Below are positions 1,794 through 32,491 of a DNA stretch of 64,000 bases, piece after piece (the first letter of the stretch is position 1; the number at the start of each line of letters is the position of its first letter). Under the pieces are notes generated by a model, which saw nothing but the letters and a program-made list of their open reading frames with translations, did not search any database and was not told the origin of the DNA. The translations under genes and the position numbers were made by a program. The stretch is from NCBI GenBank assembly GCA_024679065.1, contig JAGIQG010000035.1, positions 7,440,001-7,504,000 of the forward strand, in the 5' to 3' direction. Source of the DNA: Sphyrna mokarran. Taxonomy: Eukaryota.

Positions 1794-1886
1794 CTGCACA
1801 GGAATAGGAGCTGCTGTGTCATTGCACACCTCCTTGTCTAAAGCTGTGGACTTATTCATGAAGCGGCAGATCAGGGAATCAGTATT
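1794..1886 (-). CDS. Candidate exon NTDSLICRFMNKSTALDKEVCNDTAAPIPVQ (phase 0-0); alternative continuation or UTR exon
   Basis: Acceptor tttcttcattgttttgtgttaaaccaacag, donor CAG|gtgagt, 93 nt, open only in phase 0. Confidence 0.5.
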
Positions 1887-4150: not shown

Positions 4151-4174
4151 TGTGACGGTATCAAAGATCACAAT
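4151..4174 (-). CDS. Candidate terminal coding segment AKENCDL*
   Basis: Acceptor atatttaatatcttgcgcag. Removing the CR1 at 4270-5358 leaves an intron of about 100 nt linking it to the 59-nt exon in phase 0. Confidence 0.5.
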
Positions 4175-7100
4175 TCTCCTTTGCCTGCGCAAGATATTAA
4201 ATATGTAGAACTGGGAGATAAAGCAGCTCAAGCATGAACATGGAAAACTCTCATGGATTGAAAAAAATCTCATGGATTGAAGATCGGCTATCTAATAGAA
4301 AGCAGAGAGTTAGAATAAATGGGTGCTTTTCTGGTTGGCAGTTGGTGACTAGTGGAGTGCCGCAGGGATCGGTGCTGGGGTCTCAACTGTTTACCATTTA
4401 CATAGACGATCTGGAGGAGGGGGCTGAGTGTAAGGTAACAAAATTTGCTGCTGACACGAAGATGAGTGGAAAAGCATGGAGGATGTGGAAAGTCTGCAGA
4501 GAGATCTGGGTAGGCCGAGTGAGTGGGCGAGGACCTGGCAGATGGAGTATAATATTGGCAAATGTGAGGTTATCCACTTTGGAAGAAATAATTGTAGGAT
4601 GGAATATTATTTAAATGGTGAAAAGTTGCAGCATGCTACTGTGCAGAGGGACCTGGGGATCCTTGTGCATGAATTGCCAAAAACTCAGCCTGCAGCAGGT
4701 GATCAAGAAGGCAAATGGAATGTTGGCCTTTATCGCGAGGGGGGATAGAATATAAAAGCAAGGAGGTCTTGCTGCAGCTGTACAGGGCACTGGTGAGGCC
4801 GCAACTGGAATAGCGTGTGCAGTTTTGGTCCCCTTATTTGCGAAAGGATATATTGGCCTTGGAGGGAATACAGAGAAGGTTCAGCAGGCTAATACCAGAG
4901 ATGAGGGAGTTAGATTATGAGGAGAGATTAAACAGACTGGGCCTGTACTCGTAGGAGTTTAGAAGTTTGAGGGGGGACCTTATAGAAACTTACAAGATAA
5001 TGAAGGGGCTAGATTGGGTAGAGGTAGTAAGATTCTTTCCATTTAGAAAGGAAACCAAAACTAAAGGGCACAGCCTTAAAATAAAGGGGGACAGTTTAGA
5101 ATAGAATTGAGGAGGAACGTCTTCTCTCAGAGGTGTTGAGTCTCTGGAATTCTCTGCCCATTGAAGTGGTGGAGGCTACTTTGGTGAATATGTTTTAGAT
5201 AGATTTCTGATAGACAAGGGAATTAAGGGTTATGGGGAGCAGGCGGAGAAGTGGAACTGATCCACTCCAGATCAGCCATGATCTTACTGGATGACGGTGC
5301 AGGCTCAAAGGGCTAGCTGGCCTACTCCTGCTCCTATTTCTTATGTTCTTATGTTCTTACCGACTGGCATTCTGTAGCAAAGTCAGTTCCATTTTCCGGA
5401 AGACACTTAAAAGGACGATCTGAAAATACAAACCAGATAGTTGACTTTCTAAATCTTCAAGTAATTAGCCATAGTCCCCAGCAGAACAGAGACACCTTGC
5501 TCTAATGCAGGATGTGCAATATGGAAAGCATCCTTTCCGGATATATCACAGCTTGTATGCTCCTGCTCTGACCAAAGCCACAAGAAACTTCAGAGGGTTA
5601 TGAACATTGTGCAAACCAGCCTCCCATCCACTGACTCTGTCTACACTTTCCACTACCTCCAAAATGCAATCAACATAATCAAGGACCCACATACCCTGGA
5701 CATTCTCTCTTCCACTTTCTTCCATCAGGAAAGAGATACAGAAGTCTGAGGTCCTGTACCAGCCAACTCAAGAACAACATCTTCCCAGCTGTCAGCAGAT
5801 TTTTGAATGGACCTACCTTGCACTAAGTTGACCTTTCTCTACGCCCTAGCTATAACCGTAACACTATATTTTGCACTCTCTCCTTTCCTTTTCCCCTATG
5901 ATCTCTATAAATGGTATGCTTTTTTTCTGTATAGCCCAAAAGAAACAATACTTTTCACTGTATCCCAAAACATGTGACAATTACAAATCAAAGCAAATCA
6001 AATTTTAAAAAGCTTGAGGACCATCATTTTGCAATCATGGGGCAAGGCAAGGAGGAGGGCCTGAAACAACAAAGAACAACACAGCATGGGAAACAGGCCC
6101 TTCAGCCCAACGAGCCCACATTGCCATTTTAACAAGGTGCATTCCCTCTACCACCCATGACCCTTGTCAATTGCTTATGAAATCCACATTGGGAACCAGA
6201 TTGAGGGGAGACTAATTTAGGGACAATTTGTTACACCAATTAGCCTAAGAGCACATCTTTGGGGTGTGGGAAGAAACTGGAGCACCCGGAGAAAACCCAC
6301 GCAAGCACAAGGAGAATGCTCAAACTCCCACAGATACTGGCCCGAATCCATGTATCTGCACAGCACAGGGATATTCACTGAGCTGTCGTGTTGCCCATCA
6401 GCTGGTCCAGTTTAAGCGTACACTAACGACGTGAAGCACTAGGATACTCTCGAAAAATCTGAGAGCAGCCCTCGCACGACCCATTACATGTATGCCCCTT
6501 GTTGGACAACAAGACGGACTGAAGCACCTGTGGATTAAAAGAGAAAAACATCAATAACATGGCACATCTTATGCAAACATCCAAGGGAATCACCAGAAGC
6601 TCAAAAGTAAAATAAATGAGCCAGAAAATATGTTGGAAGGTCCATAGGGATCAATTGATTCCCAGGAAAATCCCAAGGCTCTTGATGCCTATTTAAAAGT
6701 CTCCTATATCCTTCCATCTCTATTCCGCTCATGTGTCTATATAACTATTCCTTAAACAACTCCAGCGTGCCTACCTCCACCATCTTACTTGGCAATGCCT
6801 TCCATACCCCCACAACACTGTGTGAAAAACCTCCCTCTAATATCCGAATTGCTCCCCTCACCTTTGTAATATTACCTTCCAATCTAGGAAAAAGTTTACC
6901 ACTGTTTACTCTAATATTATACACCTCTATTAGATCTTCATAATCTTATACACCTCTATTAGATCTCCCCTTATTCTCCGTCTTTCTAAGGAAAACTGTC
7001 CCAACTTGCCCAATCTTTCCTCGTAACTCAGACCTTCCATACCAGGCAGCATCCTGGTAAACCTCCTCTGCACTCTCTCCAGAGTCTTCATGTCCTTCCG

Positions 7101-10100
7101 GTAGTAAGGCGACCAGAATTGGACGCAGTATTCCAAATGAGGTCTAACCAAAGTTGTATACAACTGCAACATTAAAGGCCAGCTCTTGTACTCTATACCC
7201 CTTCGTATAAAGGCGAGCATACCATAAGCTTTCTTCACAACCTTCTCCACCTGTACTGCCACCTTCAAAGATTTGTGCATTTGCACCCCCAGGTCCCTCT
7301 GCGTTTCTATACTCTTAATAGGTCTACCCTTTATTGGATAACTCCTCCTTACGTTATTTCTCCCAAAATGCATTACCTCGCATTTATCAGGATTAAATTC
7401 CATCTGCCATTTATCTGCCCAATACACCTTGAACTACCACAGCCGATCTGGGGATTGAACCCATGCCAATGGCATCATACACTAGCCACCTGACCCAAAC
7501 AACACCCATTTGGTAATGGACATTAAGGAGAACTTTGTTACTGAGAAAGGAGTATTGTATACAACTCTGGGTGCCACACTATAGGAATCCCATAGTACCA
7601 ACTAAAAATTCTTAGAGTGACCATCAAGTCTGCACCAACTAATTCCAGCCTTGGATCACTGAGTGTGTGAAGTCTGCATGTTCTCCCTATGTCTGTGTGA
7701 GTTTCCACCAGGTGCTCCAGTTTCCTCCCAAAGTGCAAAGATGTGCAGATTGGCCATGTTAAATTGCCCTTAATGACCTAAAATGTGTGGATTAACCATG
7801 GTAAATGCATGGGATTAGGGACATAGGTTGGCAAGGAGATGGGCCTGGGTAAGATGCTCTTTCAGGGGGTCAGTGCTGACTCAATGGGCTGAATGGCACT
7901 GTAGGGATTCTATGGATTCAGCAGTGAGTTGTGAAATAGGGGAAGGTGAATTCAATCATTGGTAATCAGATCAATGCATGAACGTACCGTCCTTAATACT
8001 GAGGATTACATCTTCTTTCTTGTTATTGCCTCCGCAATATTCTACTTGGCAGCAGTACGGACCCTCATCTCCCATGGTCAAATTGTGTACGGTGAGAGAG
8101 ACGTTACCTTGCTCAATGTCCTCAAACAAGTTGTATTTTGTGTTAGAACGATAGGTGATATTTTTCCCATCAGTTCTAAGAATCATTTTGTGACTTGCAG
8201 ACATCTCTGAGCACCTGCCTTGACTCCAATGCATTGCAGTTAAACCATATGAGAGAACGCTGTACGTGCAAGGCAGGATGACCGAGGATCTCAACATCCC
8301 ATTGATGTGTAATGCCTCTGCAAAAAAGAATGGAAATTACATCCAGAGTCTGTAATAGGAGGAGATTGTGTTACCAAAACAGCTGAATCACAACAACTGA
8401 ATCAGAACACTTTTAAGATTAGTATCTTCAGATTTAACCTAAAGAATGTGAAGGTGAAAAATTAAGCGGCTGCTGCTGGTGTGGAATAAAGGGGCAGAAG
8501 AAAGCCAGTTACCCCTTCAAGCCAAAAGAGAAAGCATCTTGTCCAGATGTAATACAGCTTGGTATGGCTCCTGCTCTGAACGACAAAGAGCGACATTGAC
8601 AAAAGAAAAGCGGTGGATGTGGTTTATATGGACTTCAGCAAGGCATTTGATAAGATTCCCCATGCAAGACTTCTTGAAAAGGTGAGAGGGCATGGGATCC
8701 AAGGGGCTGTTGCCTTGTGGATCCAGAACTGGCTTGCCTGCAGAAGGCAGAGAGTAGCTGTGAATGGGTCTTTTTCTGCATGGAGGTCAGTGGAGTGTCC
8801 CAGCGTTCTGTTCTAGGATCCAGGTCATCCATAAGCGACCTGGATGAGGAAGTGGAGAGATGGGTTAGTCAGTTTGCCGATGACACAAAGTTTGGTGGTG
8901 TTTTGGATAGTCTGAAGGCACGTCAGAAGTTGCAGTGAGACATAAGATAGGATGCAAGACTGGGCGGAGAAGTGGCAGATGGACTTCAACGCAGACAGAT
9001 ACGTAGTGGTCCGTTTTAGCAGGTCCAATGGGATGAAGGAGTACAATATCAAGGGTAGGACTCTTAGCAGTGTTGAGCAGAAAAAGACCTTGGAGTCTGG
9101 GTCCATAGGACTCTTAAATCGCCCTTGCAGGTGGAGGATGTGGTCAAGAAGGTGTATGGTGTGCTAGCTTTCATTAATTGAGAGATTGAGTTTAGGAATC
9201 AGGAGGTAATGCTGCAACATTATAGGACCCTTGTCAGACCCCACTTGGATACTGTGCGCAGTTCTGGTCACCTCACTACAAGAAGAATGTAGAACCTATT
9301 GAGAGGGTTCAGAGGAGATTTACAAGGATGTTGCCTGGATTAGGAGGCATGTCTTATGAAGGTAGGTTGAGGGAGCTAGGTCTCTTCTCCCTGGAGAGAT
9401 GAAGATTGAGAGGCGACCTGATAGAGTTAATAAAATATTGAGATGTGGATTCTTGGATGCTATTTCCCAGGGCTGAAATGGTCGCTACAAGAGGACAGAG
9501 GTTTAAGGTGCTGGGGAGCAGGTACGGAGAAGATGTCAAGGATACGTTTTTCAGTCAGAGGATAGCGAGTGAATGGAATCGGCTGCTGTCGGTGGAGGTA
9601 GAGACAAACTCGCTGAGGTCTTTTAAGAGACTTCTGGATAAGTGCATAGGATTTAATGGGATTGAGAGTCATAGATAGGCCTGTTAGGTATAGATATGAC
9701 CGGCGCAACTCATGGGCCGAAGGGCCTGTTGTGCTGTAGTGTTCTATGTTCTAAGATCGCAAGAAACCACAAAAGCTTGGGATTGTAGCCCAGTCCATCA
9801 CACTAACTAGCCTCTCATCCACTGACTCTGTCTACACTTCTGGTTGCCTTGGAAAAGCAGCCAGCATAATTCAGGACCCCACGCACCCAGACATTTTCTC
9901 TTCCACCTTTTTCCTTTGGGAAAAGGATACAAAAGTCTGAGGTCACGTACCAGCCGACTCAAGAACAGCTTCTTCCCTGCTGCTGTCAGACTTTTGAATG
10001 GACCTACCTCGCCTTGAGTTGATCTTTCTCTACACGTAGCTGTGGTAAAAGCACAGGTTAGGAGGATAGAGTGGTAAGTGGATGGGCCTGGATAAGATGC

Positions 10101-13100
10101 TCTTTCAGGGAGTCAGTGCTGACTCAATGAGCTGAATGGCACTGTAGATATTCTATGGATTCAACAGTAAGTTGTGAAATATAGGAAGGCAAATTCAATC
10201 ATTGATAATCAGGTCAGTTGTATGAACTCACCCAGATTAAGGGTAAGGATTATATCTTCTTTCCTCTCATTGAACATTCCGCTATATTGTATCCAGCAGC
10301 CTCATCTCTCATGGTCAAATGGTGTATGGTGAGAGATAGGTTACCTTGCTCAATGTCCCCAGACAAGTTGTATTTTGCATTTAAACCATTGATGATATTT
10401 TTCCCATCAGTTTTAAGCAACTCGTTGCTACAGAAACATATAAACATTTCTGAGCACCTGCCTTGACCCCAACACATTGCAGTTAAGCAATAAGAGGCAA
10501 CATTGTAGATGTAAGGCAGAATGACCGAGGATCTTAGCGTCCCATTGATATGCAATGCCTCTGCAACGAAAGGAATGGAAATTACATTCAGAGTCTGTAA
10601 TATGGAGGAGGACATGTTACCAAAGCAGCTGAATCACAGCAACTGAATCAGAACACTTTTAAGATTAGTGTCTGCAGATTTAACCCAAAGAATGTGGAGA
10701 TGCAAAATTAAGCAGTTGCTGCTGTTGTGGAACAAGGAGAAAGCCAGTTACCTTCTCAAGTCAGTATAGAAAGCATTTTGTCCAGATGTATCACAGTTTG
10801 GTATGGCTTCTGCTCTGAACAAGATCGCAAGAAACTACAAAGGCTTGGGATCGTAGCCCAGTCCTTCATGCAAACCATCCATTGACTCTGTCTACACTTC
10901 CCGCTGCCTTGGAAAAGCAGCCGGCATAATCAAAGACCCCAGGCATCCTGGACATTCTCTCTTCCACTTTCTTCCATCAGGAAAAAGATACAAAATTCTG
11001 AGGTCCCGTACCGATCGATTCAAGAACAGTTTCTTCCTTGCTGCTGTCAGACTTTTGAAAGGACCTACCTCGCATTAAGTTGATCTTTCCCTACGCCCTA
11101 GCTATGGTAAAAGCACAGAGTTGGGGAATAGAGTGGCAAGTGGGTGGGCCTGGATAAAATGCTTTTATTGGACGTTAGTACTGGCTCAATAGGCCAAATG
11201 GCATTGTAGGGACTCTATGGATCCAGCAGTGAGTTGTGAAATATAGGAAGGCAAATTCAGTCATTGGTAATCAGAACAATTGTACGAACTTACCGGCTTT
11301 AATGCTGAGGATTACATCTTCTTTCTTGTTATTACCTCTGCTATATTCTATCCAGCAGCAGTACGGACCCTCATCTCTGATAGTCAAATTGTGTATGGTG
11401 AGAGAGACATCACCTTGTTCAATGTCCCCATACAAGTTGTATTTTTTTTTCAAACGAAGGGTAATTACTTTCTCAGCAGTTGCAAAAAACACGTTAGAAC
11501 AGAAATATGTTTCCATTTTGGAGCACCAGCCTTGACCCCAACATATTGAAGCTAAACCATAAGAGGTAACATTGTAGGTGCAAGGCAGGGTGACTGAGGA
11601 TCTTAACGTCCCATTGATATTCAATGCTTCTGCAAAAAAAAGGAATGGAAATTACATTCAGAGTCTGTAATGTGGAGAATGACATGTTACCAAAGCAGCT
11701 GAATCACGATGACTGAATCAGAACACTTTTAAGATTAGTGTCTGCAGATTTAACCCAAAGAATGTGGAGATGCAAAATTAAGCAGTTGCTGCTGTTGTGG
11801 GACAAGGAGGCAGGAGAAAGCCAGTTATAGAAAGTCTCAAGTCAGTATAGAAAGCATTTTGTCCAGATGTATCACAGTTTGGTATGGCTTCTGCTCTGAA
11901 CAAGATCGCAAGAAACTACAAAGGCTTGGGATCGTAGCCCAGTCCATCGTGCAAACCGTCCATTGATTCTGTCTACACTTCTCCCTGCGTCAGAAAAGCA
12001 GCCGGCATAATCAAGGACCCCAGGCATCCTGGACATTCTCTCTTCCACTTTCTTCCGTCAGGAAAAAGATGCAAAAGTCTGAGGTACCGTACCAATCAAC
12101 TCAAGAACAGTTTCTTCCCTGCTGCTGTCAGACTTTTGAACGGACCTACCTCGCATTAAGTTGATCTTTCGCTATGCCCTGGCTATGATTGCAGCACTAC
12201 ATTCTGTACTCTCTCCTTTCCTTCACCTCTATGTACTCTATGAACGGTATGCTTTTTCCATGTAGCGTGCAAGAACCAATACTTTCTACTGGATCCCAAA
12301 ACATGTGACAATAATAAATCCAATCAAAAAAAAACTTGAGGGCCCCATTTTGCAATATTGGGGCAAGGCAAGGAGGAGGGCCTCCTTGAGCTACCACAGC
12401 CAATCCAGGGATTGAACCCATGCCACTGGAGTCATACACGAGGCACCTGATTTAAACAACACCCAGTTAGACATTAAGGAGAACATAGTTACTGGGAAAG
12501 GAGTGTTGTGGACAGTTCTGGGTACAGGATTCCCAAGGAATCCCATAGAATCATTACAGTGCCCATGAAGCCTGCACCAGCCAGTTCCGGCCTGGGGTGA
12601 CTCTCCACGTGGAGTTCTCCCCATGTCTGCATACATTTCCTCCTGGTGCTCCGGTTTCCTCTCACATTCCAAAGATGTGCAGCTTAGGAGGATTAGCCAT
12701 GTTAAATTGCCCCTTAGTGTCCAAATATGTGCAGGTTAGGTGAATTGGTCACTCTAAATTGCCCCTTAGTATCCAATGAACAAAGAATAAAGAAAAATAT
12801 AGCATAGGAACAAGGTCTTCGGCCCTCCAAACCTGCACCAACAACGCTGCCTGAGTGAACTAAAACCCCTACTCTTCCGGGAACCATATTCCTCTATTCC
12901 CATCCTATTTGTGTATTTGTCCAAATGCCCCTTTAAAGTCAACATCGTGTCTGCTTCCATTACCTCCTCAGCACTGAGTTCTAGGCATCACCACCCTCTG
13001 TATAAAAAACTTGCCTTGCATATCTCTGTTAAACCTTGCCCCTCACACCTTAAACCTGTACCCCCTAGTAATTAACTCTTCCACCTTGGGAAAAAGCTTC

Positions 13101-16100
13101 TGACTATCCACTCTGTCCGTGCCTCTCATAATCTTGTAGACTTCTATCAGGTTGCCCCTCAACCTCCATCACTCCAGTGAGAACAAACCCAAGTTCCTCC
13201 AATCTCTCCTCATTGCTAATGCCCTCCACACCAGGCAACATCCTGGTAAATCTTTTCTGTACCCTCTCCAAAGTCTCTACATCCTTCTGGTACTGTGGCG
13301 ACCAAAATTGAACACTAGATTCCAAATGTAGCCTAACTTAGGTTCTTTGAAACTGCAACATGACTTTCCAATTTTTAAACTCAATGCAAACACGGCATAT
13401 GCCTTCTTGACTACCTTATCCATCTGCAGTGTTATTTTCAGTGATCTATGTACCTGTACGCCCAGATCCCTCTGCCTATCAATACTCTTAAGGGTTCTCC
13501 CATTTGCTGTGTATTTCCTATCTATATTAGTCCTTCCAAAAAGCATTACTTCACATTTGTCTGGATTAAGCTCAATCTGCCATTTCTCCTCCTCAAGTCT
13601 CCAACCGATGTATATCCTGCTGTATCCTCTGACGCTCTTCATTGCTATCAGCAATTCCACCAACCTTTGTGTCATCCACAAACTTAATAATCAAATCAAT
13701 CACATTTTCCTCCAAATCATTTTTCTATGTTACAAACAACAAAGTTCCCAGCACTGATCCCTGAGGAATGCCACTAGCCACAGTCCTCCATTCAGAAACA
13801 CACTCTTACATTGTTACCCTCTGTCTTCTATAACCAAGCCACTTCTGTATCCACCTTGCCAGCTCACCTCAGATTCCATGCAACTTCACCTTCTGCACCG
13901 GTCTGCCATGAGGGACCTTGTCAAAGGCCTTACTGAAGTCCATGTCGACAATATCCACTGCCCTACCCTCATCAATCATCTTCATAACCTCCTCGCAAAA
14001 CTCATTCAAGTTAGTGAGACACAACTTTCCTTTCACAAAACTATGTTGCGTCTCATTAATATGTCCATTTATTTCCAGTAAATCCTGTTCGAAAAATCCT
14101 CTCCAATAATTTCCCTACCACTGATGTAAGGCTCACCAGCCTGTATTGACCTGGATTATCCTTGCTACTCTTCTTAAACAAAGGAACAGCACTGGCTATT
14201 TTCCAATTATTTGGGACCTCCCCCTAGCCAGTAAGAATACAACAATTTCTCTTGAGGCCCCAGAAATTTCCTTCATTGTCTCTTTCAGTATCCTGCGTTA
14301 TATCCCATCAGGCCCTGGGGACTTGTTTACCTTAATGTTTTTCAAGACCTCCAATACTTCTCTTTATAATCTCAACATGACCCAAACTATCTACACACCC
14401 TTCTCCAGATTTATCATCCAGCAAGTCCTTCTCTTTGGTGAATATTAATGCAAAGTATTAATTTGATACCCTCACCCTTTTCTCTGGCTCCCTCTCCTGT
14501 CCTTGAATGGACCAGCCTCTCCCTGATTATCCTCTTGCTATTTATATATGTATAAAAAGCCTTGGGATTTTCCTTAATCCTTCCAGCCAATGACTTTTCA
14601 TGACCCTTTTTAACCCTCCTGACTCCTTGCTTAAGTTTCTTTCTACTTTCCTTGGATTCCACACTTGCTTTGTGTGTTCTCAGCCTTGACAAATTCCTCC
14701 TTTCTCTTTTTGACTAGGCTCACAGTATCTCTCATTATCCAAGGTTCCCGAAAATTGCCATACTTATCCTTCATCCTTACAGAAACATGCCGGTCCTGAA
14801 TTTCTATCAAATTACACTTGAATGCCTCCTACGTGCCAGATGTTGGTTTGCTCCCAAATATCTGCTGCCAACCTACATTCTTCAGTTCCTGCCTGATGTA
14901 ATTAGCTTTCCTTCAATTTAACACCTTCACCTGAGGATTGCCCTATCTTTATCTATCAGTCCCTTAAAGCTTACTGAATTGTGGTCACTGTTCCCAAACT
15001 GCCCCTCTACTGAAACATCGACAACCTGGCTGGGCTCATTTCCCAGGTCAAATATGGCCCTTCCCCCACCTGGACTATCTACATACTGTATGCTGCCTAC
15101 CAACTCTGCCCCATCCACACTCCTAGCACTAAGTGGATCCCAGTCAATATAGGGGAAGTTAAAATCTCCCAACACAAGAATCCTGTTACTTTCACACCTT
15201 GCCAAAATCTGGTTACATATCTGTTCCTCTATCCCCTGCTGGCTGTTGGGTGGCCTGTAGTAAACCCCAACATTGTGACTATACCATTCCTATACCTAAG
15301 CTCTACCATATTGCCTCACTGTACGAGCCCTCTGAGGTGTCCTCCCACACTACACCTATTATATTCTCCTTAACCTTTAGTGCAACCCATTTTACTTCCA
15401 CCTCTATCTCGCCTGAAACATCTGTATCCTGGAACATTAAGGTGCCAATCCAGTCCTTCCCTTAACTAAGTCTTTGTAATAGCAACAGAGCTACTCTCTA
15501 ATTCCCCTTCAATCCCCTTTGGTTCCCACCCCCCACCAAACTAGTTTAAATCCTCCTATATGACGCTAGCAAACCTCCCGGCCAGAATATTTATACCGCT
15601 CCAGTTTAGATGCAAACTGTCCTTTTGTACAAGTCTCACTTGCCCTGAAAGAGCTCCCACTGGTCCAGATATCTGAAAACCCCTCCTACACCAGCTGTTT
15701 ATCCACGTGTCGAGCTGTAGCATCTTCCTATTTCTAACCTCACTAGCACATGGCACAGGAAGTAATCCTGAGATTATGGATAGCACAGTGGTTAGCACTG
15801 CTGCTTCACAATCCCAGAGACCTGGGTTCAATTCCGGGCTTGGGAAACTGCCTGTGTGGAGTTTTCACATCTCCTCGGGTCTGCATGGGTTTCCTCTGTG
15901 TGCTCCGATTTCTCCCAAAGTCCAAAGATGTGCGGGTTAGGTTGATTGGCCATGCTAAAATTCTCCCTTAGTGTCCTGAGATGCATAGGTTAGAGAGACT
16001 AGTGGGTAAATATGTAAGGATACGGGGGGTAGCACCTAGGTGGGATTGTGGCCGGTGCAAACTCAATGGGCCCGATGGCCTCTTTTTGCACTGTAGGGTT

Positions 16101-19100
16101 TCTATGACTTCTAGAGTCCTGCTTTTTAACTTTCTATCTAACTCTCTAAAGTGCTGCTGCAGGACCATGTCATTTCTTGCCTATGTCGTTAATACCAATA
16201 TATATCATGACCTCTGGCTGCTCATCCTCTCCCTATAGAATGCCTTCTGCCCATTCAGAAATACTCTGGACCCTGGCATCAGGGAGGCAACATATCACCT
16301 TGGAGCCTCTTCCATGTCCACAGAGTTGCCTATCTGTACCCCTAACTACAGAGTTCCCAAAGAACTATTGCCCTAGTGCTCTTTGTCCCTCTCTACTTAA
16401 GAACGGAGCCAGCCGTAGTGTCACTGCTCTGACTGCTGCAGCTATTATTCCCTGATAGGCCACTCATCCCCAACAGTATCCAAAACGCATGCTTGCTTCC
16501 TGCGCTGACTGCCTGCTCCTTCCTGCGGCTACCCATCTATCTACCTCCACCTTGGGTGTCACCACATTACTAAAACTCCTTCCTATGACACTTTCTGCCA
16601 CCTTCATGCTTCTAAGTGCATCCGACTGTTAGAAAAACCCATCAACGCACTCTGCGAGGAGCTGGGTGCAATTCCTGCAGATGCAGTCGTTGGAAGTGTC
16701 ATGTATCTCCCACTTCTCTCAAGTGCATAACCCCACTACCTGACATTTCTATCACCAATTCAATTATTTTAGAACATTTATTAAAAATTCTTACCTTCAC
16801 TTATCGATGTAGATACCCAAAGTAGGGAAAAAGCTTCTGACAATCCATTCTGTTCATGGTCGCCTCTCATAATCTTGTGGACTTCTATCAGGTCACCCCT
16901 CAACCTCTGTTGTTCCAGTGAGAACAAACCAAGTTTCTCCAACGTCTCCTCATAGCTACTACCCTCCATACCTGGTAACATCCTGGTAAATCTTTTCTTT
17001 ACCCACCTCTAGTTGCCCTTGGGGGCTGTGGGTTGGGATAGTTCCTTTTTAACCAACTAACTAGACCAATAAACTTATAACTGGAAAAATTAGATTTACG
17101 ACTTCACTCTTTAAATACCATACTGCTCAAAATTACCAAATTTCAATCCCACTCTGACTGTCTCACACTATGTACAATGTTTACCAATGATGTGCAGGTT
17201 GGGTGGATTAGCCATAATAAATATATGGGGTTAAGGGGATAGGGTGGCAAGGGTGTGGGCCTGGATAAAATACTCTTTCAGGGAGTCGGTGCTGACTCAA
17301 TGGGCTGAACGGCACTGTAGAGATTCTATGGATTCAGCAGTGAGCTGTGAAATATAGGAAGGCAAATTCAATCATTGATAATCAGATCAATTGCATGAAC
17401 TCACCGTCCTTAAAGCTGAGCATTATATCTTCTTTCTTGTCATTGAACAGTCCTGTATATTCTACCCGGCAGTTGTACAGACCCTCATCTCTCATGGTCA
17501 AATTGTATATGGTGAGAGAAACGTTACCTCGCTCAATGTCCCCAAGCAAATTGTATTTTGAGTTAAAACGATGGGTGATACTTGTTCCATCAGTTTTAAT
17601 CAACTGTTGGCCACACAAACATGCAAATATTTCTGAGCAGTCTCGACCCCAACACATCGCAGTTAAACCATAAATGGCAACATTGTAGGTGCAAGGCAGG
17701 GTGACCGAGGATCTCAATGTCCCAATGATATGCAATGCCTCTGCAAAAAGGAATGGAAATTACATTCAGAAACTGTAATATGGAGGAGGGCGTGTTACCA
17801 AAGCAGCTGAATTACAATAATTGAATCAAACACTTTTAAGGTTAGTATCTGTAGATTTAACACAAAGAATGTGGAGGTGCAAAATTAAGTGGCTGCTGCT
17901 GTTTGGAACACGGGGAACTCCCCCAAGCCAGTTCCACCAGTCCATGAAATCTTGGCTGAGCTTCAACTTAATTGCAAGACCTCACCTTAACGTCACATCC
18001 CTTTGGTTAACAAAAATCAATCCCGGATTTAGAGGGGAGTTTTTCCTTTCCCACCTGCCACAGGAATCGTATCAGTGGGACAAAATCCTGTCCTTGCACC
18101 AATTGCCATTTGCATTAGAGAGTTCCAAACCTCTACATAGAAATATAGGAATTAGAAGCAGGCGCAAGTCATTCATTTTGATCATAGCTGATCGTCCAAT
18201 TCAATACCCTGATCCTGCCTTCTCCACATATCCCTTGATCACTTTAGCTGCAAGAGCTATGGCCATGATTCTCCCAAAAAAAGTGCGTGAAAGAAAGGGA
18301 GTTTTTTTTTATCTTGATTTCCAAAAAGAATCTCCACCACTCTGTGCATCATAGAATGCCTCAGCAGGATTCCCTCTTTGTGGGCAAGACCCATTGCCAC
18401 TCAGGAGGCTGGCAGCATAGTGTTGAACAGAATATTGCAGATGTGCCGATCTGTCAGTGCAAAGATTGACTCATACACTGTGACCTTACATTGACAGCCT
18501 CCCAATCAGTGGCCAGGCCTGCAATCCTCCCACTGCTGGCTTTCAAACCCCCCAACCCCGGATCGTGGCTTCCCTGACCTCCACGGGGCAGCCCCAATCT
18601 CCCCACCTCCTCAGGCATACCCGATCTCCCAATTCACCACCCCATGACAGTCCCGACCCTCCAGCAGCCCTGACCCACCTCCCATACCTGATCACTTCTT
18701 TCCACTCTCTCCAAGTCATTCCAATACAGAGAGGCAATGGATCCTCCCCATCCTCACCAATTGCCCTGCCTCCCCCAATAGGCCCTGTGCTCTCTAGCCC
18801 CATCCCCTTTGGCACTGCTAGTTTGTCCCTTGGGCAATGCCGGGGCACTGCCCAGAAAGTAGCCCCCGTTTACTTGCGACCTCCTTGGGGGGTGCCTCAA
18901 TGGCCTCTCTTCCCTCCAGTGGAATAACCCCCTACGTCTAATTCCTTCTTGAAATCACACAACGTTTGATTGTTGTGGACAACCCTAACCCCCCCTGGTT
19001 GTGTAACAATAGGGGGCTGGCCCTCATTCTGGTAAATCGACATTGCGCTTCCCCCTGGACCATACCCTTCTGGAAACTGCCCTCACTACTCCAGGTGTGG

Positions 19101-22100
19101 TCTATACTGTCCCAGAGGGTGATGGCCTGCTCACCCCTTTGAGGCGGTGAAAGCTGACTGATGGTGATTGAGCCTGAGGGTCAACACACCTCAGGCAAGG
19201 AGCAAGGTTAAGAAGGCCTTTATGGATAATCTCAGCTGGTGTGGGAATTGAACCCACGTTGTTGGTGTCACACCGCATCACTAACCAGCAATTCAGCCAA
19301 CTGAGCTAACAGACTCCCCCAGGTATGGTCTAACCAGGGTTTTGTACAGTTGGAGCACAACCTTGTATGTTTCTTTTTCACTTAATTTGTAGGATGTGCG
19401 CATCACTGGGTGATGTCAAGTTGTCATCAGTTTCCAGAAGGGAATGGTCCAGGGCGGGGAAGCACAATGTCAATTTACCAGAATGAGAGCTGGACCCCTC
19501 TTTGTTGGAGCTTTACGTATCCAGGCATGTGGCGAGCATTCCATCCTGCCTTGTGGGCAGCACGGTGGCACAGTGGTCAGCACTGCTGCCTCGCAGTGCC
19601 AGAGAGCTGGGTTCAATTCCCAGCCTCGGGACACTGTCTGTGCGGGGTCTCTGGGACTGTCGTGGGACTGCCTGGAGTAATGAGGGCAGTTTCCAGAAGG
19701 GTATGGGTCCAGGGGGAAGCGCAATGTTGATTTACCAGAATAAGAGCTAGACCCCTGTTGTTACACCATCAGAGAGGGTTAGGGTTGCACTTGCCAGAAT
19801 TTAGAAGATTTAATCTAAGTTTAAGAGGAACAGACAGTGTACAGAGAGAGAAAAACTATCCCGTGTCCATTTATAACCCCCTGGTTATTAATCCTCTGAT
19901 TATTATTTAAAAAGTGAAAAGTTGCAGCATGCTACGGTGTACAGGGACCTGGGATCCTTGTGCACGAATCGCAAAAACCCACTCTGCAGGTGCAGCAGCC
20001 GATCAAGAAGGCGGACGGAATGTTGGCCTTTATAGCGAGGCTGAATAGATGCCAGAATGTGGCTGGAATTTGCAGTGTTAATGTAAGCCTAGCTGTGACT
20101 AATAAATAATAAAGAAATACAAATGCTTACCGAATTGGTGAATGTTTTGATTCCAAATGATCCAATGAAAAACAGCTAGAAAACAAAAAAAAAATTGTGA
20201 TTACGTGCAAAGTTTTTTTGCTAATATATCAAAGCCCGAATTTTCCCACCTTTCACACGGGTTGAATCTTCGGTCCCACTGACAGCAACCCTCCACTGTG
20301 GTTACCCCGGTGATGAGGGGTGCATTCAACGTGAAACCCTGTCGATAGCGGCGGGACGGGAAGATCCCGATGCCAGCCAAAAGCGGGTCACCTCCACCGC
20401 TATGGAACATGCGATAAGTTGTGTGGAAAATCCCACCTCTGGGAGTTTTTGTTGAATTGGCAGAGATTCTCTACGTTCATTTTCAATGGACAGGAGAGCT
20501 AGCTGGGAAGACAATCCAATGGGAGCCCTCAGGAGTCTTTTACGCCAGCAGGACTTCCCATTCCGATTGTCCCAATTATGCCAATGACGTATTAGGATTC
20601 CTGCCGTGAAAGGTCAGGAGATCATGGTGTCCAATGGTAACCATAGTCAGTTAAAACATGACAAAATTCCACCCATTGAGTTGTTGGAGTTCACTGGAAA
20701 ATAAAACTTGACACCAAGGCACAGGATAACATTGCTGTACATTAATATATCACTAGTGAAGCTTCCCAGTCTAATATCTCCCACATCACAATCAGCAGGA
20801 TTTACAACAGATCCTGATCACTGAGAACTGGCAAAGTGTATCTGTCGAGGGAGCGCAGGTAAGTACCCCTGGGGGAAGAGGGGGCGTATAGCAGTGAGGG
20901 TCAGATCCTTTCCTTATCGTGCATACTTGTCAAACTGCATTATGGTGTGGCATGGCATTCACTCCACTCCTGACTGGAAAACTCTTTTGCCAGTAGTCAA
21001 AACTGCCCAATACATCACCCAGCTCCCAGCCTCCCCAGGATATTTATCACAAACGCTGTCTGTGGAAATCTCTCAGCATTACTAGAAATTCCACCCATCC
21101 CAGCCTCAGACTGTTTGCCCCCTCTCTACATTCTGGGAGGTCTTACAGGTGCATTTGAGCCGATCAGAGTAGGTTCAGAAACAGTTCTTCCCTAGACTCA
21201 GCTGGCCTCTGTCCTTGGACATATTTCCAGGCAATGGGCATTGTGGTAACATGCATGTACACATTTAATGACATTGGCCCTTTTTCGTAATGACCACTTG
21301 CATTTGCTTTTTCTTGTATCTTGGGAGCCTGCAAAGTCACTTTTCATCAGATTCGTATTTGCACACCTTACATTGACAATAAAGCTGAACTGAATTTCCT
21401 TGGCACTATTACGATACTGCTGAGGTGGGGGTTTGGCAGGGGGTGCAATGCTGGCTTAGTTGTCTTCAAGTGGAGAAGTCAATACGTGGGGGAATGGTTC
21501 CCATTGTCCATTGTGGGGGTGGTGCTTCCTGAAGGGAAGGGATGGGTAGGGATTTCCTTGAGTGTGAAGGTATGTCCATGGAGAAAGGGGAGAATGCGCA
21601 TGGGGGGGCAGGGAGGGGGGTGGGTGCCTCATGCATGGAGGGGAACGTGCGGGGGTGGAAACGTGCGGGGAGGAAAGTGCGTAGGGTGGGGGAACATGTG
21701 GAAGGGGGGGGGAATTCCTTTTTTTTTTATATTGATCAGGGCACCTTTTAAAAACAACACCGTGATCTCCTGAAGTCCGAAGTTGTTGCTTGGAAGGAGG
21801 ATGTTTTAGAATCCGTCCTACACTGTGTGACCAACCGCGTTCCCCCCCCCCCCCCCCCCGCCCCAGCACCCCCACTCCCCCACCCACCTAGGGGATTTAT
21901 TTTTATCTAACTTTAAAGAGGAATGGCGCGGCAATCCAGCAGTGCAGTTGGCGGGCAGCACACATCTTTGCCCCACCCAAGCTGACAAAGTTAAAGCATG
22001 ATGATATTCCACTCATTGAGTTGTTGGGGTTCATTGGAGAATTATCAAACAAAATTTGGTATCAAGGCACAAAACACAATATCAGGACCAAAAGGCTTTA

Positions 22101-31100: not shown

Positions 31101-32453
31101 ATCAGCACCGATGTGAGGACACAACCAAACCCACCCCAGCAGTTAGCCCTGCTGCCTCACAGCACCAGGACTCAGTAAGAATTTAGCAACACCAATTTTA
31201 AATCCAACCGATTTATTTGATAGTAAATCTGCATTTGATAGTAATCTCGTCTATTGCAGACCAGAACACTGCATTTGCCTGACGAAGACGAAAAGGTCGA
31301 AAGCTCGCAGATTTACTATCAAATAAATCGGGTGGATTTAAAATTGGTGTTGCTAGATTCTTACTGCGTTCTTACTACCCCAGTCCAACGCCGGCATCTC
31401 TATATCATCACAGCACCAGGGACAGGGGTTCAATCCCGACCTTGGCCCACTCTCTGTGCGGAGTCTGCACATTCTCCCTGTGTCTGCATGGGTTTCCTCT
31501 GGGTGCTCTGATTTCCTCCCACAGTCTGAAAGATGCGCTGGTTAGGTGCATTAACTGTGCTAAATTCTCTCTCAGTGAATTCAAACAAGTGCCGGATTGC
31601 AGCGACTAGGGGATTTTCACAGTAACTTCACTGCAGAATTAATGTAAGCCTAGTTGTGACACTAATAAATAAACTTAAATTTCCCATTTTAGCATGGGAA
31701 GGTGATGGCGTAGTGATATTGTCACTGGACTAGTCACCCAATGTAATCTTCCAAGACGACAGCAGATGGTGAAATTAGAATTTAATAAACAGCAAACCTG
31801 AATTTAAAAAAAGTCTATTGGTGACCATGAAACCATTTTTGATTCTTGTAAGAACCTGTCTGGTTCACAAATGCACCTTTAGGGAAGGAAATCTGGCATC
31901 CTTACCCTGCCTCGCCTCCAAGTGACTCTAGAGCAAAGTGTTGATCTCAAAGCCTTCCGGCAATAAATGCTGGTCAGCCGGTGATGCCTGTGTCCCACAA
32001 ATGAATTTTAAAAAATGCTGCACACCATCCTGACTTGGAAATATATCTCTATTCCTTCCCTGACATTGGGTCAAAACTCAGAAATTCCCTTCCTGGTAAC
32101 ACCGTGAGTGTACCTATAGCAGGTTGACTGCAGTGTTTTAAGAAGGGATCTCACCTTCCCAGTTACAGACAGCTAGGGATGGGCAATAAATATTGAAATG
32201 TAAATATTGACCCTGCATACCAGAAATGAACAAAGAGAGACAGTTACATGAGCGGGGATTACAATTCAAACTCCAATTCAAGAAAGGCTACAACACTAAA
32301 AGGACAAGGTTAATGGCTCTTAACTTCTTACACGGGTAAATGTATTAAAACAGTTATAAAAATGAACATTCATTACATTGTACATAAACTTGTACATACA
32401 TAGGTAATCATACCAAACTCACCATGAAAAGCCAAACAATGCCTAGTCTTCAT
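4151..32453 (-). CDS. Spliced TIM/HAVCR-family (hepatitis A virus cellular receptor-like) gene with tandem IgV exons; coding model join(32453-32423,20175-20131,17740-17405,11629-11294,8317-7988,5419-5361,4174-4151), 386 aa if V2 is skipped
   Basis: All exons have canonical AG/GT boundaries and compatible phases (1,1,1,1,1,0). The joined frame is open from MKTRHCLAFHAVFHWIIWNQNIHQFEALHI to DRPFKCLPENGTDFATECQSAKENCDL*. The IgV exons carry TIM motifs (LPC, CWG..C....C, GD..GxVSLTI.N.T..D.G.YxC, FND). V-exon identity is strong; linkage of the small exons is inferred. Confidence 0.6.
4270..5358 (+). mobile_element. CR1/HER1 LINE, 5'-truncated
   Basis: RT motifs SGVPQGSVLG, KFAADTK, WQMEYN; (ttcttatg)n tail. 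Confidence 0.92.
5361..5419 (-). CDS. Post-IgV two-Cys exon (DRPFKCLPENGTDFATECQS, phase 1-0)
   Basis: Acceptor ggtttgtattttcag, donor TCG|gtaaga, 59 nt, open in phase with the V exons; NGT sequon. Confidence 0.65.
5525..5998 (+). mobile_element. Rex1/Babar LINE 3' fragment (paralogous copies at 8528-10043, 10768-11103, 11848-12325)
   Basis: Encodes degenerate IIKDPTHPGHSLF.LLPSGKRY.SL..RT..LKNSFFPA; aaatc tail. Confidence 0.8.
6063..7426 (-). mobile_element. CR1 LINE 3' part with long SINE-containing 3' UTR
   Basis: ORF 6930-7427 (WQMEFNPDKCEVMHFG..RPHLEYCVQFWSP); absent from the paralogous unit near 12382. Confidence 0.9.
7988..8317 (-). CDS. TIM-type IgV exon V1
   Basis: ttttgcag|AG GCA ... 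AAG GAC G|gtacgt; 330 nt, open, with an in-frame deletion in the CC' loop: LPCTYSVLSYGLTAMHWSQGRCSEMSASHKMILRTDG...GNVSLTVHNLTMGDEGPYCCQVEYCGGNNKKEDVILSIKD. Confidence 0.85.
8582..9752 (+). mobile_element. CR1 LINE, truncated, inserted into a Rex1 fragment
   Basis: DVVYMDFSKAFDKIPH and FADDTK motifs; ttctatgttct tail; the paralogous empty site reads ctctgaacaagatcgc. Confidence 0.92.
10232..10560 (-). pseudogene. TIM-type IgV pseudo-exon V2
   Basis: Splice sites are intact, but a 10-nt deletion (GGTCCGTACT relative to V3) after RDE shifts the frame to a TAA at 10250-10252. The B-strand Cys is mutated (LPY). Length is 329 nt. Confidence 0.85.
11294..11629 (-). CDS. TIM-type IgV exon V3; all six TIM cysteines present
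   Basis: ttttgcag|AA GCA ... AAA GCC G|gtaagt; 336 nt, open: LPCTYNVTSYGLASICWGQGWCSKMETYFCSN...GDIEQGDVSLTIHNLTIRDEGPYCCWIEYSRGNNKKEDVILSIKA. Confidence 0.88.
12780..17183 (-). mobile_element. Near full-length decayed CR1 LINE (ORF1 esterase-like, APE, RT) with nested SINE 15776-16050
   Basis: TSD ccaatga at 12773-12779 and 17184-17190; fragments GDFNFPYIDWD, IKENPKAFY, DSLHLN..G.NILA. Confidence 0.9.
17405..17740 (-). CDS. TIM-type IgV exon V4 (first in transcript order); retains LFND MILIBS-like motif
   Basis: ttttgcag|AG GCA ... AAG GAC G|gtgagt; 336 nt, open: EALHIIGTLRSSVTLPCTYNVAIYGLTAMCWGRDCSEIFACLCGQQLIKTDG...GDIERGNVSLTIYNLTMRDEGLYNCRVEYTGLFNDKKEDIMLSFKD. Confidence 0.9.
20131..20175 (-). 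CDS. Candidate second leader exon (xVFHWIIWNQNIHQF, phase 1-1)
   Basis: Strong acceptor ttttttttttgttttctag, donor TCG|gtaagc, 45 nt, open and in frame with V4. Confidence 0.65.
20234..20674. mobile_element. GC-rich non-autonomous DNA-transposon-like (MITE) element
   Basis: Terminal inverted similarity gcccgaattttcc / aaaattccaccc. Confidence 0.4.
23151..23470 (+). mobile_element. HE1-like tRNA SINE (other copies at ~7645, 12575, 22140, 25180, 27455, 33908, 34390, 52548, 60661)
   Basis: A/B-box head ggcagcatggtggctcagtgg..gttcagttcc; V-domain gggtttcc..ggtgctccggtttcctcccacagtcc. Confidence 0.85.
25940..26555 (-). mobile_element. CR1 LINE 3' fragment
   Basis: WSPHCQKNVEVLERGQRRFTRTLPG; microsatellite tail near 25940. 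Confidence 0.85.
29578..30243 (+). mobile_element. CR1 LINE 3' fragment
   Basis: CVQFWSPHYKKDVEALERVQRRFTRMLPG; ttctatgttct tail. Confidence 0.9.
30243..30415 (-). CDS. Candidate Ser/Thr-rich (mucin-like) terminal exon VPHHSMMTVTTASSATNVSSNSPSSSDNSPISTSK...
   Basis: Phase-1 acceptor cttacatagtattag|TC CCA; S/T/P-rich ORF; ends at a CR1 tail junction; minus-strand AATAAA at 29495-29500. Confidence 0.3.
31170..31407 (+). mobile_element. Penelope pLTR-derived mini-element with hammerhead ribozyme (31273-31312), inserted in a SINE head
   Basis: 13-bp TSD tcacagcaccagg (31157-31169, 31408-31420); atttgc-CTGACGA-agac gaaaag gtc-GAAA-gctc-gcagat. Confidence 0.8.
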
Positions 32454-32491
32454 CTTTCTGATGTGCTTTAGATCGAAGCAAGCCCAGAAAC
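32423..32491 (-). CDS. Candidate start-codon exon (ATG at 32453; MKTRHCLAFH, phase 1)
   Basis: Acceptor tctcttctcaaatgtgcatag, Kozak-like gaaagATGa, donor CATG|gtgagt; lies in non-repetitive sequence. Confidence 0.5.

What the first reader, a model, noticed from the sequence alone, without database searches (positions are those of the whole stretch)
4151..32491. TIM/HAVCR-like gene with an array of four IgV exons between one leader and one tail: multi-IgV or cassette-V immune protein
Known TIM proteins (HAVCR1/2, TIMD4) have one IgV domain plus mucin, TM and cytoplasmic tail. Seen here: four divergent TIM IgV exons duplicated inside one locus. The duplicated unit contains only the V exon, with no leader or tail exon of its own. 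All V exons are phase 1-1, so any subset of V4/V3/V1 joins in frame to the same leader and tail, giving about 164 aa for one V and 386 aa for three. Inference: either a tandem multi-domain TIM or a splicing-diversified V cassette system in a cartilaginous fish.
Basis: partly seen in the sequence, partly recalled or inferred. Interest (0 to 1): 0.9.

Follow-up and report, generated by a model that had tools for sequence, protein, structure and literature searches.

The report
Shark adhesion GPCR with TIM domains
The four immune-type V exons are real, but they form the front end of a shark adhesion G-protein-coupled receptor that carries TIM-like domains where its relatives carry EGF repeats, not a small TIM protein.

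Summary
Four TIM-family IgV exons lie in tandem on the minus strand. V4, V3 and V1 are intact and phase 1-1. V2 has a frameshift and a Cys-to-Tyr change. They arose by duplication of a ~1.07 kb unit that holds only the V exon.

The leader exons, the exon called a "tail" (5419-5361) and a further exon (1886-1794) match, in order, RefSeq models from 10 elasmobranch species named "adhesion G protein-coupled receptor E3-like". Those models read leader, 1-3 TIM-type IgV, short Cys stalk, GAIN/GPS, 7TM. The window ends before the GAIN and 7TM exons, so the 164-386 aa estimates are wrong.

The multi-V or cassette idea is supported indirectly. The closest available ortholog, Mustelus asterias, has annotated isoforms with three, two and one V. 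Only V4 keeps the phosphatidylserine/metal pocket motif (LFND); V3 and V1 have lost it.

Six literature searches found no paper on this architecture. I rate it a new variant of a known kind, of moderate interest. Other first-stage notes report TIM IgV exons elsewhere in this genome; I did not test them.

The parts
32423..32453 (-). Exon 1 coding part: ATG + 10 codons + 1 nt (MKTRHCLAFH), GT donor at 32422-32421, ends in phase 1
   Evidence: Read. tblastn match to the first residues of the Cetorhinus and Mustelus orthologs (weak E 0.07-0.1 because the match is short, 11 of 11 residues in order with one change).
20131..20175 (-). Exon 2, 45 nt, phase 1-1 (A-VFHWIIWNQNIHQF): second half of the conserved leader
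   Evidence: AG/GT flanks. tblastn gives 15 of 16 identical to Mustelus X1 residues 9-24 (E 4e-4).
17405..17740 (-). V4: intact TIM-type IgV exon, 336 nt, phase 1-1. Keeps the FG-loop LFND motif. One F-strand Cys is replaced by Asn and there is an extra Cys in the CC' region.
   Evidence: (HAVCR1 IgV 5dzo E 4e-24).
11294..11629 (-). V3: intact TIM-type IgV exon, 336 nt, phase 1-1. All six TIM cysteines are present. The FG loop is degenerate (G-NN in place of xFND).
   Evidence: Pairs with Mustelus domain 2 in the tree (99/96).
10232..10560 (-). V2: pseudo-exon, 329 nt. Net 7-nt shortfall relative to 336 nt, giving a frameshift. First Ig Cys changed to Tyr. In-exon stop at 10252-10250. AG and GT retained.
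7988..8317 (-). V1: intact TIM-type IgV exon, 330 nt, phase 1-1. It lacks the cysteine pair that corresponds to human TIM-1 C46-C57. FG loop degenerate (GGNN), with an extra Cys in the FG loop. Donor is GTACGT.
5361..5419 (-). Stalk exon, 59 nt, phase 1 to phase 0 (DRPFKCLPENGTDFATECQS).
   Evidence: tblastn to Rhincodon (13 of 20 identical) and Mustelus (E 0.08; E 2e-4). It sits at the same position, between the last V and the GAIN region, in all orthologs.
1794..1886 (-). 93-nt exon, phase 0-0 (NTDSLICRFMNKSTALDKEVCNDTAAPIPVQ). It matches the first part of the GAIN-region sequence of orthologs and is the last exon of the gene inside the window.
   Evidence: tblastn to Mustelus X1 residues 382-417, 69% identity, E 1e-10. 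Cetorhinus E 0.007.
5614..5931 (.). Copy of the inter-exon spacer of the duplication unit, downstream of V1. Other copies are at 9805-10033, 10866-11183 and 11947-12264.
   Evidence: the repeat finder families D2, D5 and D6.

Best explanation
Window 32453-1794 (minus strand) is the 5' part of an elasmobranch-lineage adhesion GPCR of the ADGRE (EGF-TM7) type. In this gene the usual EGF repeats are replaced by TIM-family IgV domains.

Shown:
- Exon order is ATG exon, 45-nt leader exon, V4, V3, V2 (dead), V1, Cys stalk exon, first GAIN-region exon.
- The V exon was multiplied by tandem duplication of a ~1.07 kb unit. Retroelements later spread the copies apart.
- V4, V3 and V1 are open, have splice sites and are phase 1-1.

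Inferred from orthologs:
- The gene continues beyond the window into GAIN/GPS (HL|SSFAVLMA) and a secretin-type 7TM.
- The mRNA carries one to three V domains by cassette splicing, as annotated for Mustelus asterias. This would parallel the 3-5 EGF-repeat isoforms of ADGRE5/CD97.

Inferred mechanism:
- The membrane-distal V4, which alone keeps the Asn-Asp metal/phosphatidylserine pocket, binds phosphatidylserine or a similar ligand on another cell.
- V3 and V1, whose pockets are degenerate, act as spacers or bind something else.
- Pulling on the N-terminal fragment exposes the tethered agonist and signals through G proteins.
- Inclusion of V2 would give a premature stop, so it could act as a poison exon.
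For: TIM identity of the V domains:
- V4, V3 and V1 each hit solved TIM-1/-2/-3/-4 IgV structures first, at E 4e-24, 1e-19 and 1e-19.
- In an 89-sequence TIM-like alignment, V4 positions F98 and D100 are at least 90% conserved and N99 is invariant.

Gene identity:
- A library-wide HMMER search with V4 found elasmobranch proteins of 482-952 aa that RefSeq names ADGRE-like.
- Pfam on four of them gives V-set + GAIN/GPS, plus 7tm_2 in the two complete ones.
- tblastn of these proteins on the window recovers exon 1, exon 2, the four V exons, the stalk exon and exon 1886-1794 in protein order, with nothing else in between.
- Of the 120 listed relatives of the Cetorhinus protein, 12 carry V-set. Eleven of these are elasmobranch, from 10 species. 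The twelfth, a teleost protein, has no TIM-like Ig.
- The 7TM of the Mustelus protein is closest to solved ADGRE1, ADGRE5 and ADGRL structures.

Multi-V use:
- Mustelus isoforms X1, X2 and X3 are 953, 840 and 729 aa, with three, two and one V.
- S. canicula has 2 V and Pristis has 3 V.
- In the tree, window and Mustelus V domains form one clade (98/95), and V3 pairs with Mustelus domain 2 (99/96). The array therefore predates the split of the two species.
- V4, V3 and V1 are 71, 75 and 69% identical to their nearest Mustelus domains, so the extra V domains do not evolve faster than V4.

Pocket:
- An xxND motif is present in at least one V of all 10 species and in V4. V3 and V1 have G-NN instead.
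- The role of WFND and of the three disulfides in human TIM-1 comes from passages of PMC9611583.
- The CD97 EGF-repeat isoforms come from passages of PMC13197933.
Against: - There is no RNA evidence for this species.
- The GAIN and 7TM exons of this very gene are outside the window and were not seen.
- The Mustelus isoforms are automatic RefSeq models, and I could not check their transcript support.
- dN/dS between the paralogous V exons is high (0.96, 0.99 and 0.59). That fits relaxed constraint as well as diversification.
- V4 has lost one of the six TIM cysteines. This may disturb the CC'-FG cleft on which phosphatidylserine binding depends.
- No structure model could be made.
- Ligand and signalling are pure inference.
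Confidence: 0.78

Rival explanations
1. Only V4 is used. V3 and V1 are silent relic exons in an intron, on their way to decay like V2, and the protein has a single IgV as in most sharks.
For: - Seven of the 10 species have single-V models only.
- V2 has already decayed.
- dN/dS between paralogous exons is 0.59-0.99.
- V1 has a weaker donor, GTACGT.
- V3 and V1 have lost the nearly invariant F and D of the pocket.
Against: - V3 and V1 keep open 110-112-codon frames, AG/GT sites and phase 1-1.
- Their counterparts are kept in Mustelus and are included in its annotated isoforms.
- Their identity to the Mustelus counterparts (75% and 69%) is no lower than that of V4 (71%).
- Framework residues (Trp, Cys, DxGxYxC) are intact.
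Confidence: 0.15
2. One reading: a small stand-alone TIM-like protein (leader, 1-3 V, short Cys-rich tail), secreted or otherwise lacking mucin and TM. It could be the main product or an alternative short isoform.
For: - No TM or mucin exon is seen between V1 and the window edge.
- Reading through the donor of exon 5419-5361 meets a stop after three codons (sequence), so an intron-retaining short form is conceivable.
- Soluble forms of adhesion GPCR N-terminal fragments are known (passage in PMC13197933).
Against: - Exons 5419-5361 and 1886-1794 match, in order, the stalk and GAIN start of 7TM-bearing orthologs.
- No ortholog model ends there.
Confidence: 0.05
3. Annotation artefact: a TIM gene and a neighbouring ADGRE gene are wrongly fused by gene predictors, here and in the relatives.
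For: - All named orthologs are automatic models.
- ADGRE paralogs with EGF repeats lie on the same chromosome-scale records.
Against: - The same architecture and the same unusual leader (…WIIWNQNIHQ…) recur in 10 species, from sawfish to lamniform sharks.
- The stalk exon changes phase from 1 to 0, exactly as needed to join a V exon to the next exon.
- The window has no TM or cytoplasmic exon after V1.
- Sharks' separate TIM-like genes are on other records.
Confidence: 0.02

Closest known systems
ADGRE / EGF-TM7 adhesion GPCRs (EMR1-4, CD97)
   Same: - The orthologs' GAIN/GPS and 7TM are about 40% identical to ADGRE proteins of other vertebrates, and solved ADGRE1 and ADGRE5 structures are among the closest.
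- The GPS motif HL|SS and a Stachel-like SSFAVLMA are present in orthologs.
- The N-terminal module is built of repeated phase-symmetric exons, and annotated isoforms differ in repeat number. This resembles the 3-5 EGF forms of CD97 (PMC13197933 passages).
   Different: - There are no EGF or EGF-CA domains at all. One to three TIM-type IgV domains stand in their place.
- The GAIN and 7TM exons of the window's own gene were not seen.
TIM family (HAVCR1/TIM-1, HAVCR2/TIM-3, TIMD4/TIM-4)
   Same: - IgV domain sequence: E 1e-19 to 4e-24 against solved TIM IgV structures.
- The six-cysteine pattern is present in V3.
[quoted passage not shown]
   Different: - No mucin domain, single-pass TM or tyrosine-bearing tail; orthologs have GAIN + 7TM instead.
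- Several V domains in tandem.
- In the tree the aGPCR V domains group apart from other TIM-like domains, including the sharks' own (84/91).
Multi-IgV TIM-like proteins of frogs, a turtle and a mormyrid fish (annotated "polymeric immunoglobulin receptor-like", "HAVCR1-like" or uncharacterized)
   Same: - Three to five tandem TIM-type V domains in one predicted protein.
- One frog protein (464 aa) is also encoded on a 1585-nt Logan contig, which fits an mRNA.
   Different: - These are not GPCRs.
- Their V domains fall in the other half of the tree, so they are independent expansions.
Phosphatidylserine-binding adhesion GPCRs ADGRB1/BAI1 and ADGRG1/GPR56
   Same: By inference they work alike: an adhesion GPCR whose extracellular part recognises phosphatidylserine (table passages in PMC13197933).
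   Different: - BAI1 uses thrombospondin repeats and GPR56 its N-terminal/GAIN region, not a TIM IgV.
- Phosphatidylserine binding of the shark protein is untested.

Membership tests
TIM family (HAVCR1/2, TIMD4) | IgV domain with TIM-type sequence | tested here: met
   V4, V3 and V1: the top 15 solved-structure hits are all TIM-1/-2/-3/-4.
TIM family (HAVCR1/2, TIMD4) | Six cysteines forming three disulfides (human TIM-1 C36-C105, C46-C57, C52-C104; PMC9611583) | tested here: inconclusive
   By alignment: V3 has 6 of 6. V4 has 5 of 6 (the C104 equivalent is Asn) plus an extra Cys two residues after the C57 equivalent. V1 has 4 of 6 (the C46 and C57 equivalents are both lost) plus an extra Cys in the FG loop.
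TIM family (HAVCR1/2, TIMD4) | FG-loop metal-ion-dependent ligand-binding motif (WFND) | tested here: inconclusive
   V4 has LFND (met). V3 and V1 have G-NN (not met). The V2 remnant reads MFNE in its shifted frame.
TIM family (HAVCR1/2, TIMD4) | Mucin domain, single-pass TM and cytoplasmic tail after the IgV | tested here: not met
   After V1 come a 20-aa Cys stalk exon and an exon that matches the GAIN-region start of orthologs. The orthologs have GAIN, GPS and 7tm_2.
   The window holds no neighbouring gene, only retroelement ORFs. Shark TIM-like genes lie on other records than the orthologs of this gene.
Adhesion GPCR, subfamily E (ADGRE) | GAIN domain with GPS cleavage motif | tested here: inconclusive
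   Only the first exon of that region (1886-1794) is in the window. Orthologs score GAIN 4e-11 and GPS 1.6e-14.
Adhesion GPCR, subfamily E (ADGRE) | Secretin-type 7TM closest to ADGRE | not testable with these tools
Orthologs score 7tm_2 at 1.9e-57. The Mustelus 7TM matches ADGRE1 at 2.5e-82 and ADGRE5 at 8e-68.
Adhesion GPCR, subfamily E (ADGRE) | N-terminal EGF / calcium-binding EGF repeats | tested here: not met
   None of the 11 elasmobranch V-bearing proteins has an EGF family on record, while most other ADGRE relatives in the same list do. No EGF exon was found in the window.
Adhesion GPCR, subfamily E (ADGRE) | Isoforms that differ in the number of N-terminal repeat exons | tested here: inconclusive
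   Annotated for the Mustelus ortholog with 3, 2 and 1 V. Phases in the window allow it. There are no reads for this species.

The most novel reading that the evidence does not exclude
Sharks and rays have a receptor type unknown in other vertebrates. The phosphatidylserine pocket of a TIM domain is wired directly to an adhesion GPCR, so contact with apoptotic cells, activated platelets or enveloped particles would be turned into G-protein signalling by mechanical exposure of the tethered agonist. Lineage-specific V-exon arrays and cassette splicing (3, 2 or 1 V, plus a frameshifted V2 acting as a poison exon) would set the reach and ligand range of the receptor.
Probability: 0.3. Interest if true: 0.75.

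Novelty: new variant of a known kind. Interest (0 to 1): 0.55.

Why it matters
It is a clear natural case of exon shuffling between two immune receptor families. A phase 1-1 TIM IgV exon has taken the place of the phase-symmetric EGF exons of an ADGRE receptor and was kept across sharks and a sawfish. It has then been re-duplicated independently in at least three lineages.

If V4 binds phosphatidylserine, this would be a third, structurally independent way in which adhesion GPCRs sense this lipid, after BAI1 and GPR56. It would also give a simple system for asking how the length of the extracellular arm tunes mechanical activation.

For annotation, the RefSeq names ("ADGRE3-like") hide the TIM domain. 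V exons like these should not be counted as TIM genes in surveys of immune checkpoint genes in cartilaginous fish.

Tried and rejected
Junction use in this species therefore stays untested.
- Short transcript-derived protein fragments. A search with the V3 exon translation found no candidate. That search sees only proteins of 61-194 aa and says nothing about others.
- More multi-V orthologs. A search with the first 420 residues of Mustelus X1 gave 9 proteins and no new species.
- Structure model of V4, to see the CC'-FG cleft with its altered cysteines.
- Synteny. ORFs of at least 110 aa in 32.7-64 kb are retroelement-like (RVT_1, GIY-YIG and Exo_endo_phos). tblastn with four EGF-type ADGRE paralogs found nothing in the window. 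Neither TIM-cluster nor ADGRE-cluster synteny can be judged.
- A teleost V-set + EGF + 7TM model (Diretmus) was considered as a non-elasmobranch case and rejected. Its Ig shows no TIM-like match to V4 (best E 0.032 over 11 residues).
- Pure neutral decay of V3 and V1 was considered and is kept as a rival at 0.15, not excluded.
- Literature. (listings only, apart from the papers below) showed no paper on a TIM-type IgV in an adhesion GPCR or on this gene in cartilaginous fish. Subscription journals and supplements were not covered.
- Papers read. Passages only (find mode) of PMC13197933 and PMC9611583. PMC8459961 gave no passage for my terms.
Full report
**What is in the sequence**

Six-frame ORFs showed four related Ig-like frames on the minus strand. 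Pfam scores three of them as V-set: V1 1.6e-13, V3 2.3e-11 and V4 3.1e-11. V2 scores 19.1 bits, below the cut-off. tblastn of the four translations against the window finds exactly these four loci at E 1e-26 or better. Nothing else is found beyond unit flanks and noise.

I read the exon limits from the sequence:
- V4: 17740-17405, 336 nt
- V3: 11629-11294, 336 nt
- V2: 10560-10232, 329 nt
- V1: 8317-7988, 330 nt

Each is preceded by a pyrimidine tract and AG and followed by GT (GTGAGT, GTAAGT, GTGAGT, GTACGT). V4, V3 and V1 start with two bases of a split codon and end with one, so they are phase 1-1 and have no stop.

V2 has Tyr in place of the first Ig cysteine. It is a net 7 nt short of 336 nt, mainly through a 10-nt gap after "GATGAGG". 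That shifts the frame onto a stop at 10252-10250, inside the exon.

**The duplicated unit**

The repeat finder gives four in-register copies of the exon and of its two flanks, with a V2-V3 start-to-start spacing of 1069 nt. It also gives four copies of a spacer, at 5614-5931, 9805-10033, 10866-11183 and 11947-12264. The unit is thus about 1.07 kb, made of a V exon plus intron, with no leader or membrane exon. The larger V4-V3 and V2-V1 distances hold retroelement ORFs.

Identity between units is uneven. V3 and V2 are 95% identical in the 250 nt upstream of the exon but only 79% in the exon. The V2 exon is closest to V4 (83%). I cannot explain this mosaic. Unequal crossing-over or gene conversion is the obvious candidate.

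**The domains are TIM-type**

Against all solved structures, V4's 15 best hits are TIM-1, TIM-2, TIM-3 and TIM-4 IgV domains (E 4e-24 to 4e-19). The next hit is CEA at 4e-9. V3 and V1 behave the same: 15 of 16 hits at E <= 1e-8 are TIM proteins.

Passages of PMC9611583 define the human TIM-1 features. These are disulfides C36-C105, C46-C57 and C52-C104, and the WFND motif (W112-D115) of the metal-ion-dependent phosphatidylserine site. N114 and D115 substitutions abolish function.

By alignment:
- V3 has all six cysteines but G-NN in place of xFND.
- V1 has lost both partners of the C46-C57 pair, has GGNN, and has gained a Cys in the FG loop.
- V4 has LFND, but Asn at the C104 position and an extra Cys two residues after the C57 equivalent.

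In an alignment of 89 TIM-like sequences, the N is invariant and the F and D are at least 90% conserved. V3 and V1 therefore depart from a strongly kept motif.

**What gene it is**

A library-wide HMMER search with V4 gave 997 proteins at E <= 0.001. Of the 150 listed, 45 had two or more matched stretches. I looked up names for 20 of them.

The closest single-domain hits (55-59% identity) and one three-domain hit are elasmobranch proteins that RefSeq names "adhesion G protein-coupled receptor E1/E2/E3-like", plus one Rhincodon protein named "uncharacterized".

Pfam on four of them gives V-set + GAIN/GPS. The two complete ones (Cetorhinus, Pristis) also have 7tm_2, at 1.9e-57 and 3.6e-53.

A word-indexed search with the Cetorhinus protein listed 120 relatives. 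Twelve carry V-set. Eleven of those are from 10 elasmobranch species:
- Cetorhinus
- Carcharodon
- Mustelus
- two Scyliorhinus species
- Heterodontus
- Pristiophorus
- Heptranchias
- Rhincodon
- Pristis

The other 108 are ordinary ADGRE/CD97-type proteins, with EGF domains or with none. The twelfth V-set protein, a teleost model, has no TIM-like Ig.

tblastn of these proteins onto the window recovers the following, in protein order:
- MKTRHCLAFH at 32453-32423 (ATG, donor G|GT, phase 1)
- the 45-nt exon 20175-20131, read as A-VFHWIIWNQNIHQF (15 of 16 identical to Mustelus)
- the V exons
- DRPFKCLPENGTDFATECQS at 5419-5361 (phase 1 to 0)
- NTDSLICRFMNKSTALDKEVCNDTAAPIPVQ at 1886-1794 (phase 0-0; 69% identity to Mustelus residues 382-417, E 1e-10)

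In the orthologs that last stretch leads into the GAIN domain. Nothing further matches, so the gene leaves the window. The predicted sizes of 164 and 386 aa are wrong. The stretch near 4151 has no homology support and lies in retroelement-like sequence.

The 7TM of the Mustelus ortholog is closest to solved ADGRE1 (2.5e-82 over 282 residues), ADGRE5 and ADGRL structures.

Sharks also have separate short TIM-like genes (Carcharodon "HAVCR1 homolog", a Mustelus uncharacterized protein). These lie on other chromosome-scale records than the GPCR.

**One V or several?**

The Mustelus asterias gene has three RefSeq isoforms. X1 is 953 aa with three V, X2 is 840 aa lacking the first V, and X3 is 729 aa with the first V only. 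Scyliorhinus canicula has a two-V model and Pristis pectinata a three-V model.

I built a maximum-likelihood tree of 36 V domains. Three partial domains were dropped.
- All 19 GPCR-borne V domains group together (84/91), apart from 17 other TIM-like domains.
- The window and Mustelus domains form one clade (98/95).
- V3 pairs with Mustelus domain 2 (99/96).
- The Pristis copies are nearly identical to each other, and the two Scyliorhinus canicula copies group with S. torazame.

The array in this window is therefore older than the split from Mustelus. V exons were also multiplied independently in at least two other lineages.

The three window domains are 71% (V4), 75% (V3) and 69% (V1) identical to their nearest Mustelus domains. 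The extra domains have not diverged faster than V4. This argues against V3 and V1 being dead, together with their open frames and splice sites.

Against this, dN/dS between the paralogous exons is 0.96 (V4/V3), 0.99 (V4/V1) and 0.59 (V3/V1). That is what relaxed constraint would also give.

I have no reads for this species.

**Mechanism (inferred)**

The first or only V of every ortholog keeps Asn-Asp in the FG loop, and so does V4. I therefore take the membrane-distal V4 to be a Ca2+-dependent binder of phosphatidylserine or a related ligand. V3 and V1 would be spacer or alternative-ligand domains.

The orthologs keep the GPS motif (…CSCSHL|SSFAVLMALYE…) and a full 7TM. The usual adhesion-GPCR scheme should therefore apply: autoproteolysis, force on the N-terminal fragment, exposure of the tethered agonist, and G-protein signalling.

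Variation in V number would parallel ADGRE5/CD97, whose 3-5 EGF-repeat isoforms differ in affinity for CD55 (PMC13197933, passage seen). The same review lists phosphatidylserine as a ligand of ADGRB1 (thrombospondin repeats) and ADGRG1. It does not mention cartilaginous fish or sharks (0 occurrences of either term in the held text).

V2 has intact splice sites and an internal stop. If it is spliced in, it would truncate the protein or trigger nonsense-mediated decay.

**Comparison and novelty**

The gene fails TIM membership on architecture: it has no mucin, single TM or tail. It fails the EGF criterion of ADGRE. It is best described as an ADGRE-type receptor with a TIM-type adhesion module.

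The protein models exist in RefSeq under uninformative names. Six full-text searches found no paper that describes the architecture. Supplements and subscription journals were not covered.

Tandem TIM-type V domains as such are not unique. Frogs, a turtle and a mormyrid fish have predicted proteins with 3-5 of them, and one frog protein also lies on a 1585-nt contig that fits an mRNA. These are independent, non-GPCR expansions.

I rate the finding a new variant of a known kind. Expression and ligand are still open.

**Limits**

"Closest to Mustelus" rests only on the orthologs available.
- First-stage notes on this window agree on V2 and on pocket and disulfide divergence. They disagree with me on the "secretory tailpiece".
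- Two further notes report TIM IgV exons elsewhere in this genome. I did not test them.

Noticed in passing
window 10560-10820 vs 11629-11890 (upstream introns of V2 and V3), and 10754-11053 vs 11835-12134: The intron upstream of V2 and the intron upstream of V3 are 94-95% identical, while the exons they precede are only 79% identical. The V2 exon is closest to V4 (83%). This mosaic suggests recent unequal crossing-over or gene conversion limited to the spacer.
   Followed up: partly
window 40647-45077: Two copies of a retroelement lie in inverted orientation. ORFs with RVT_1 are at 41403-42620 (minus) and 43174-44237 (plus). ORFs with a weak GIY-YIG match are at 40647-41276 (minus) and 44334-45077 (plus). 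The RT plus GIY-YIG combination recalls Penelope-like elements; that name is from memory.
   Followed up: partly
window 46871-52000, 6930-7427 and 13277-15205: LINE-type fragments (Exo_endo_phos endonuclease, RVT_1) fill much of the window, including the introns between the V exons. They account for the wide V4-V3 and V2-V1 spacing.
   Followed up: partly
window 5361-5356 (donor of the stalk exon): Reading through the donor of exon 5419-5361 meets a stop after three codons (…CAG TCG gta aga aca taa). Intron retention would therefore give a short secreted leader-V-stalk protein. There is no evidence that this happens.
   Followed up: no
proteins P0001-P0004, P0008 (frogs), P0005 (turtle), P0006 (mormyrid fish): Predicted non-GPCR proteins with 3-5 tandem TIM-type IgV domains, several named "polymeric immunoglobulin receptor-like". 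One frog protein of 464 aa also lies on a 1585-nt Logan contig, which fits an mRNA.
   Followed up: partly
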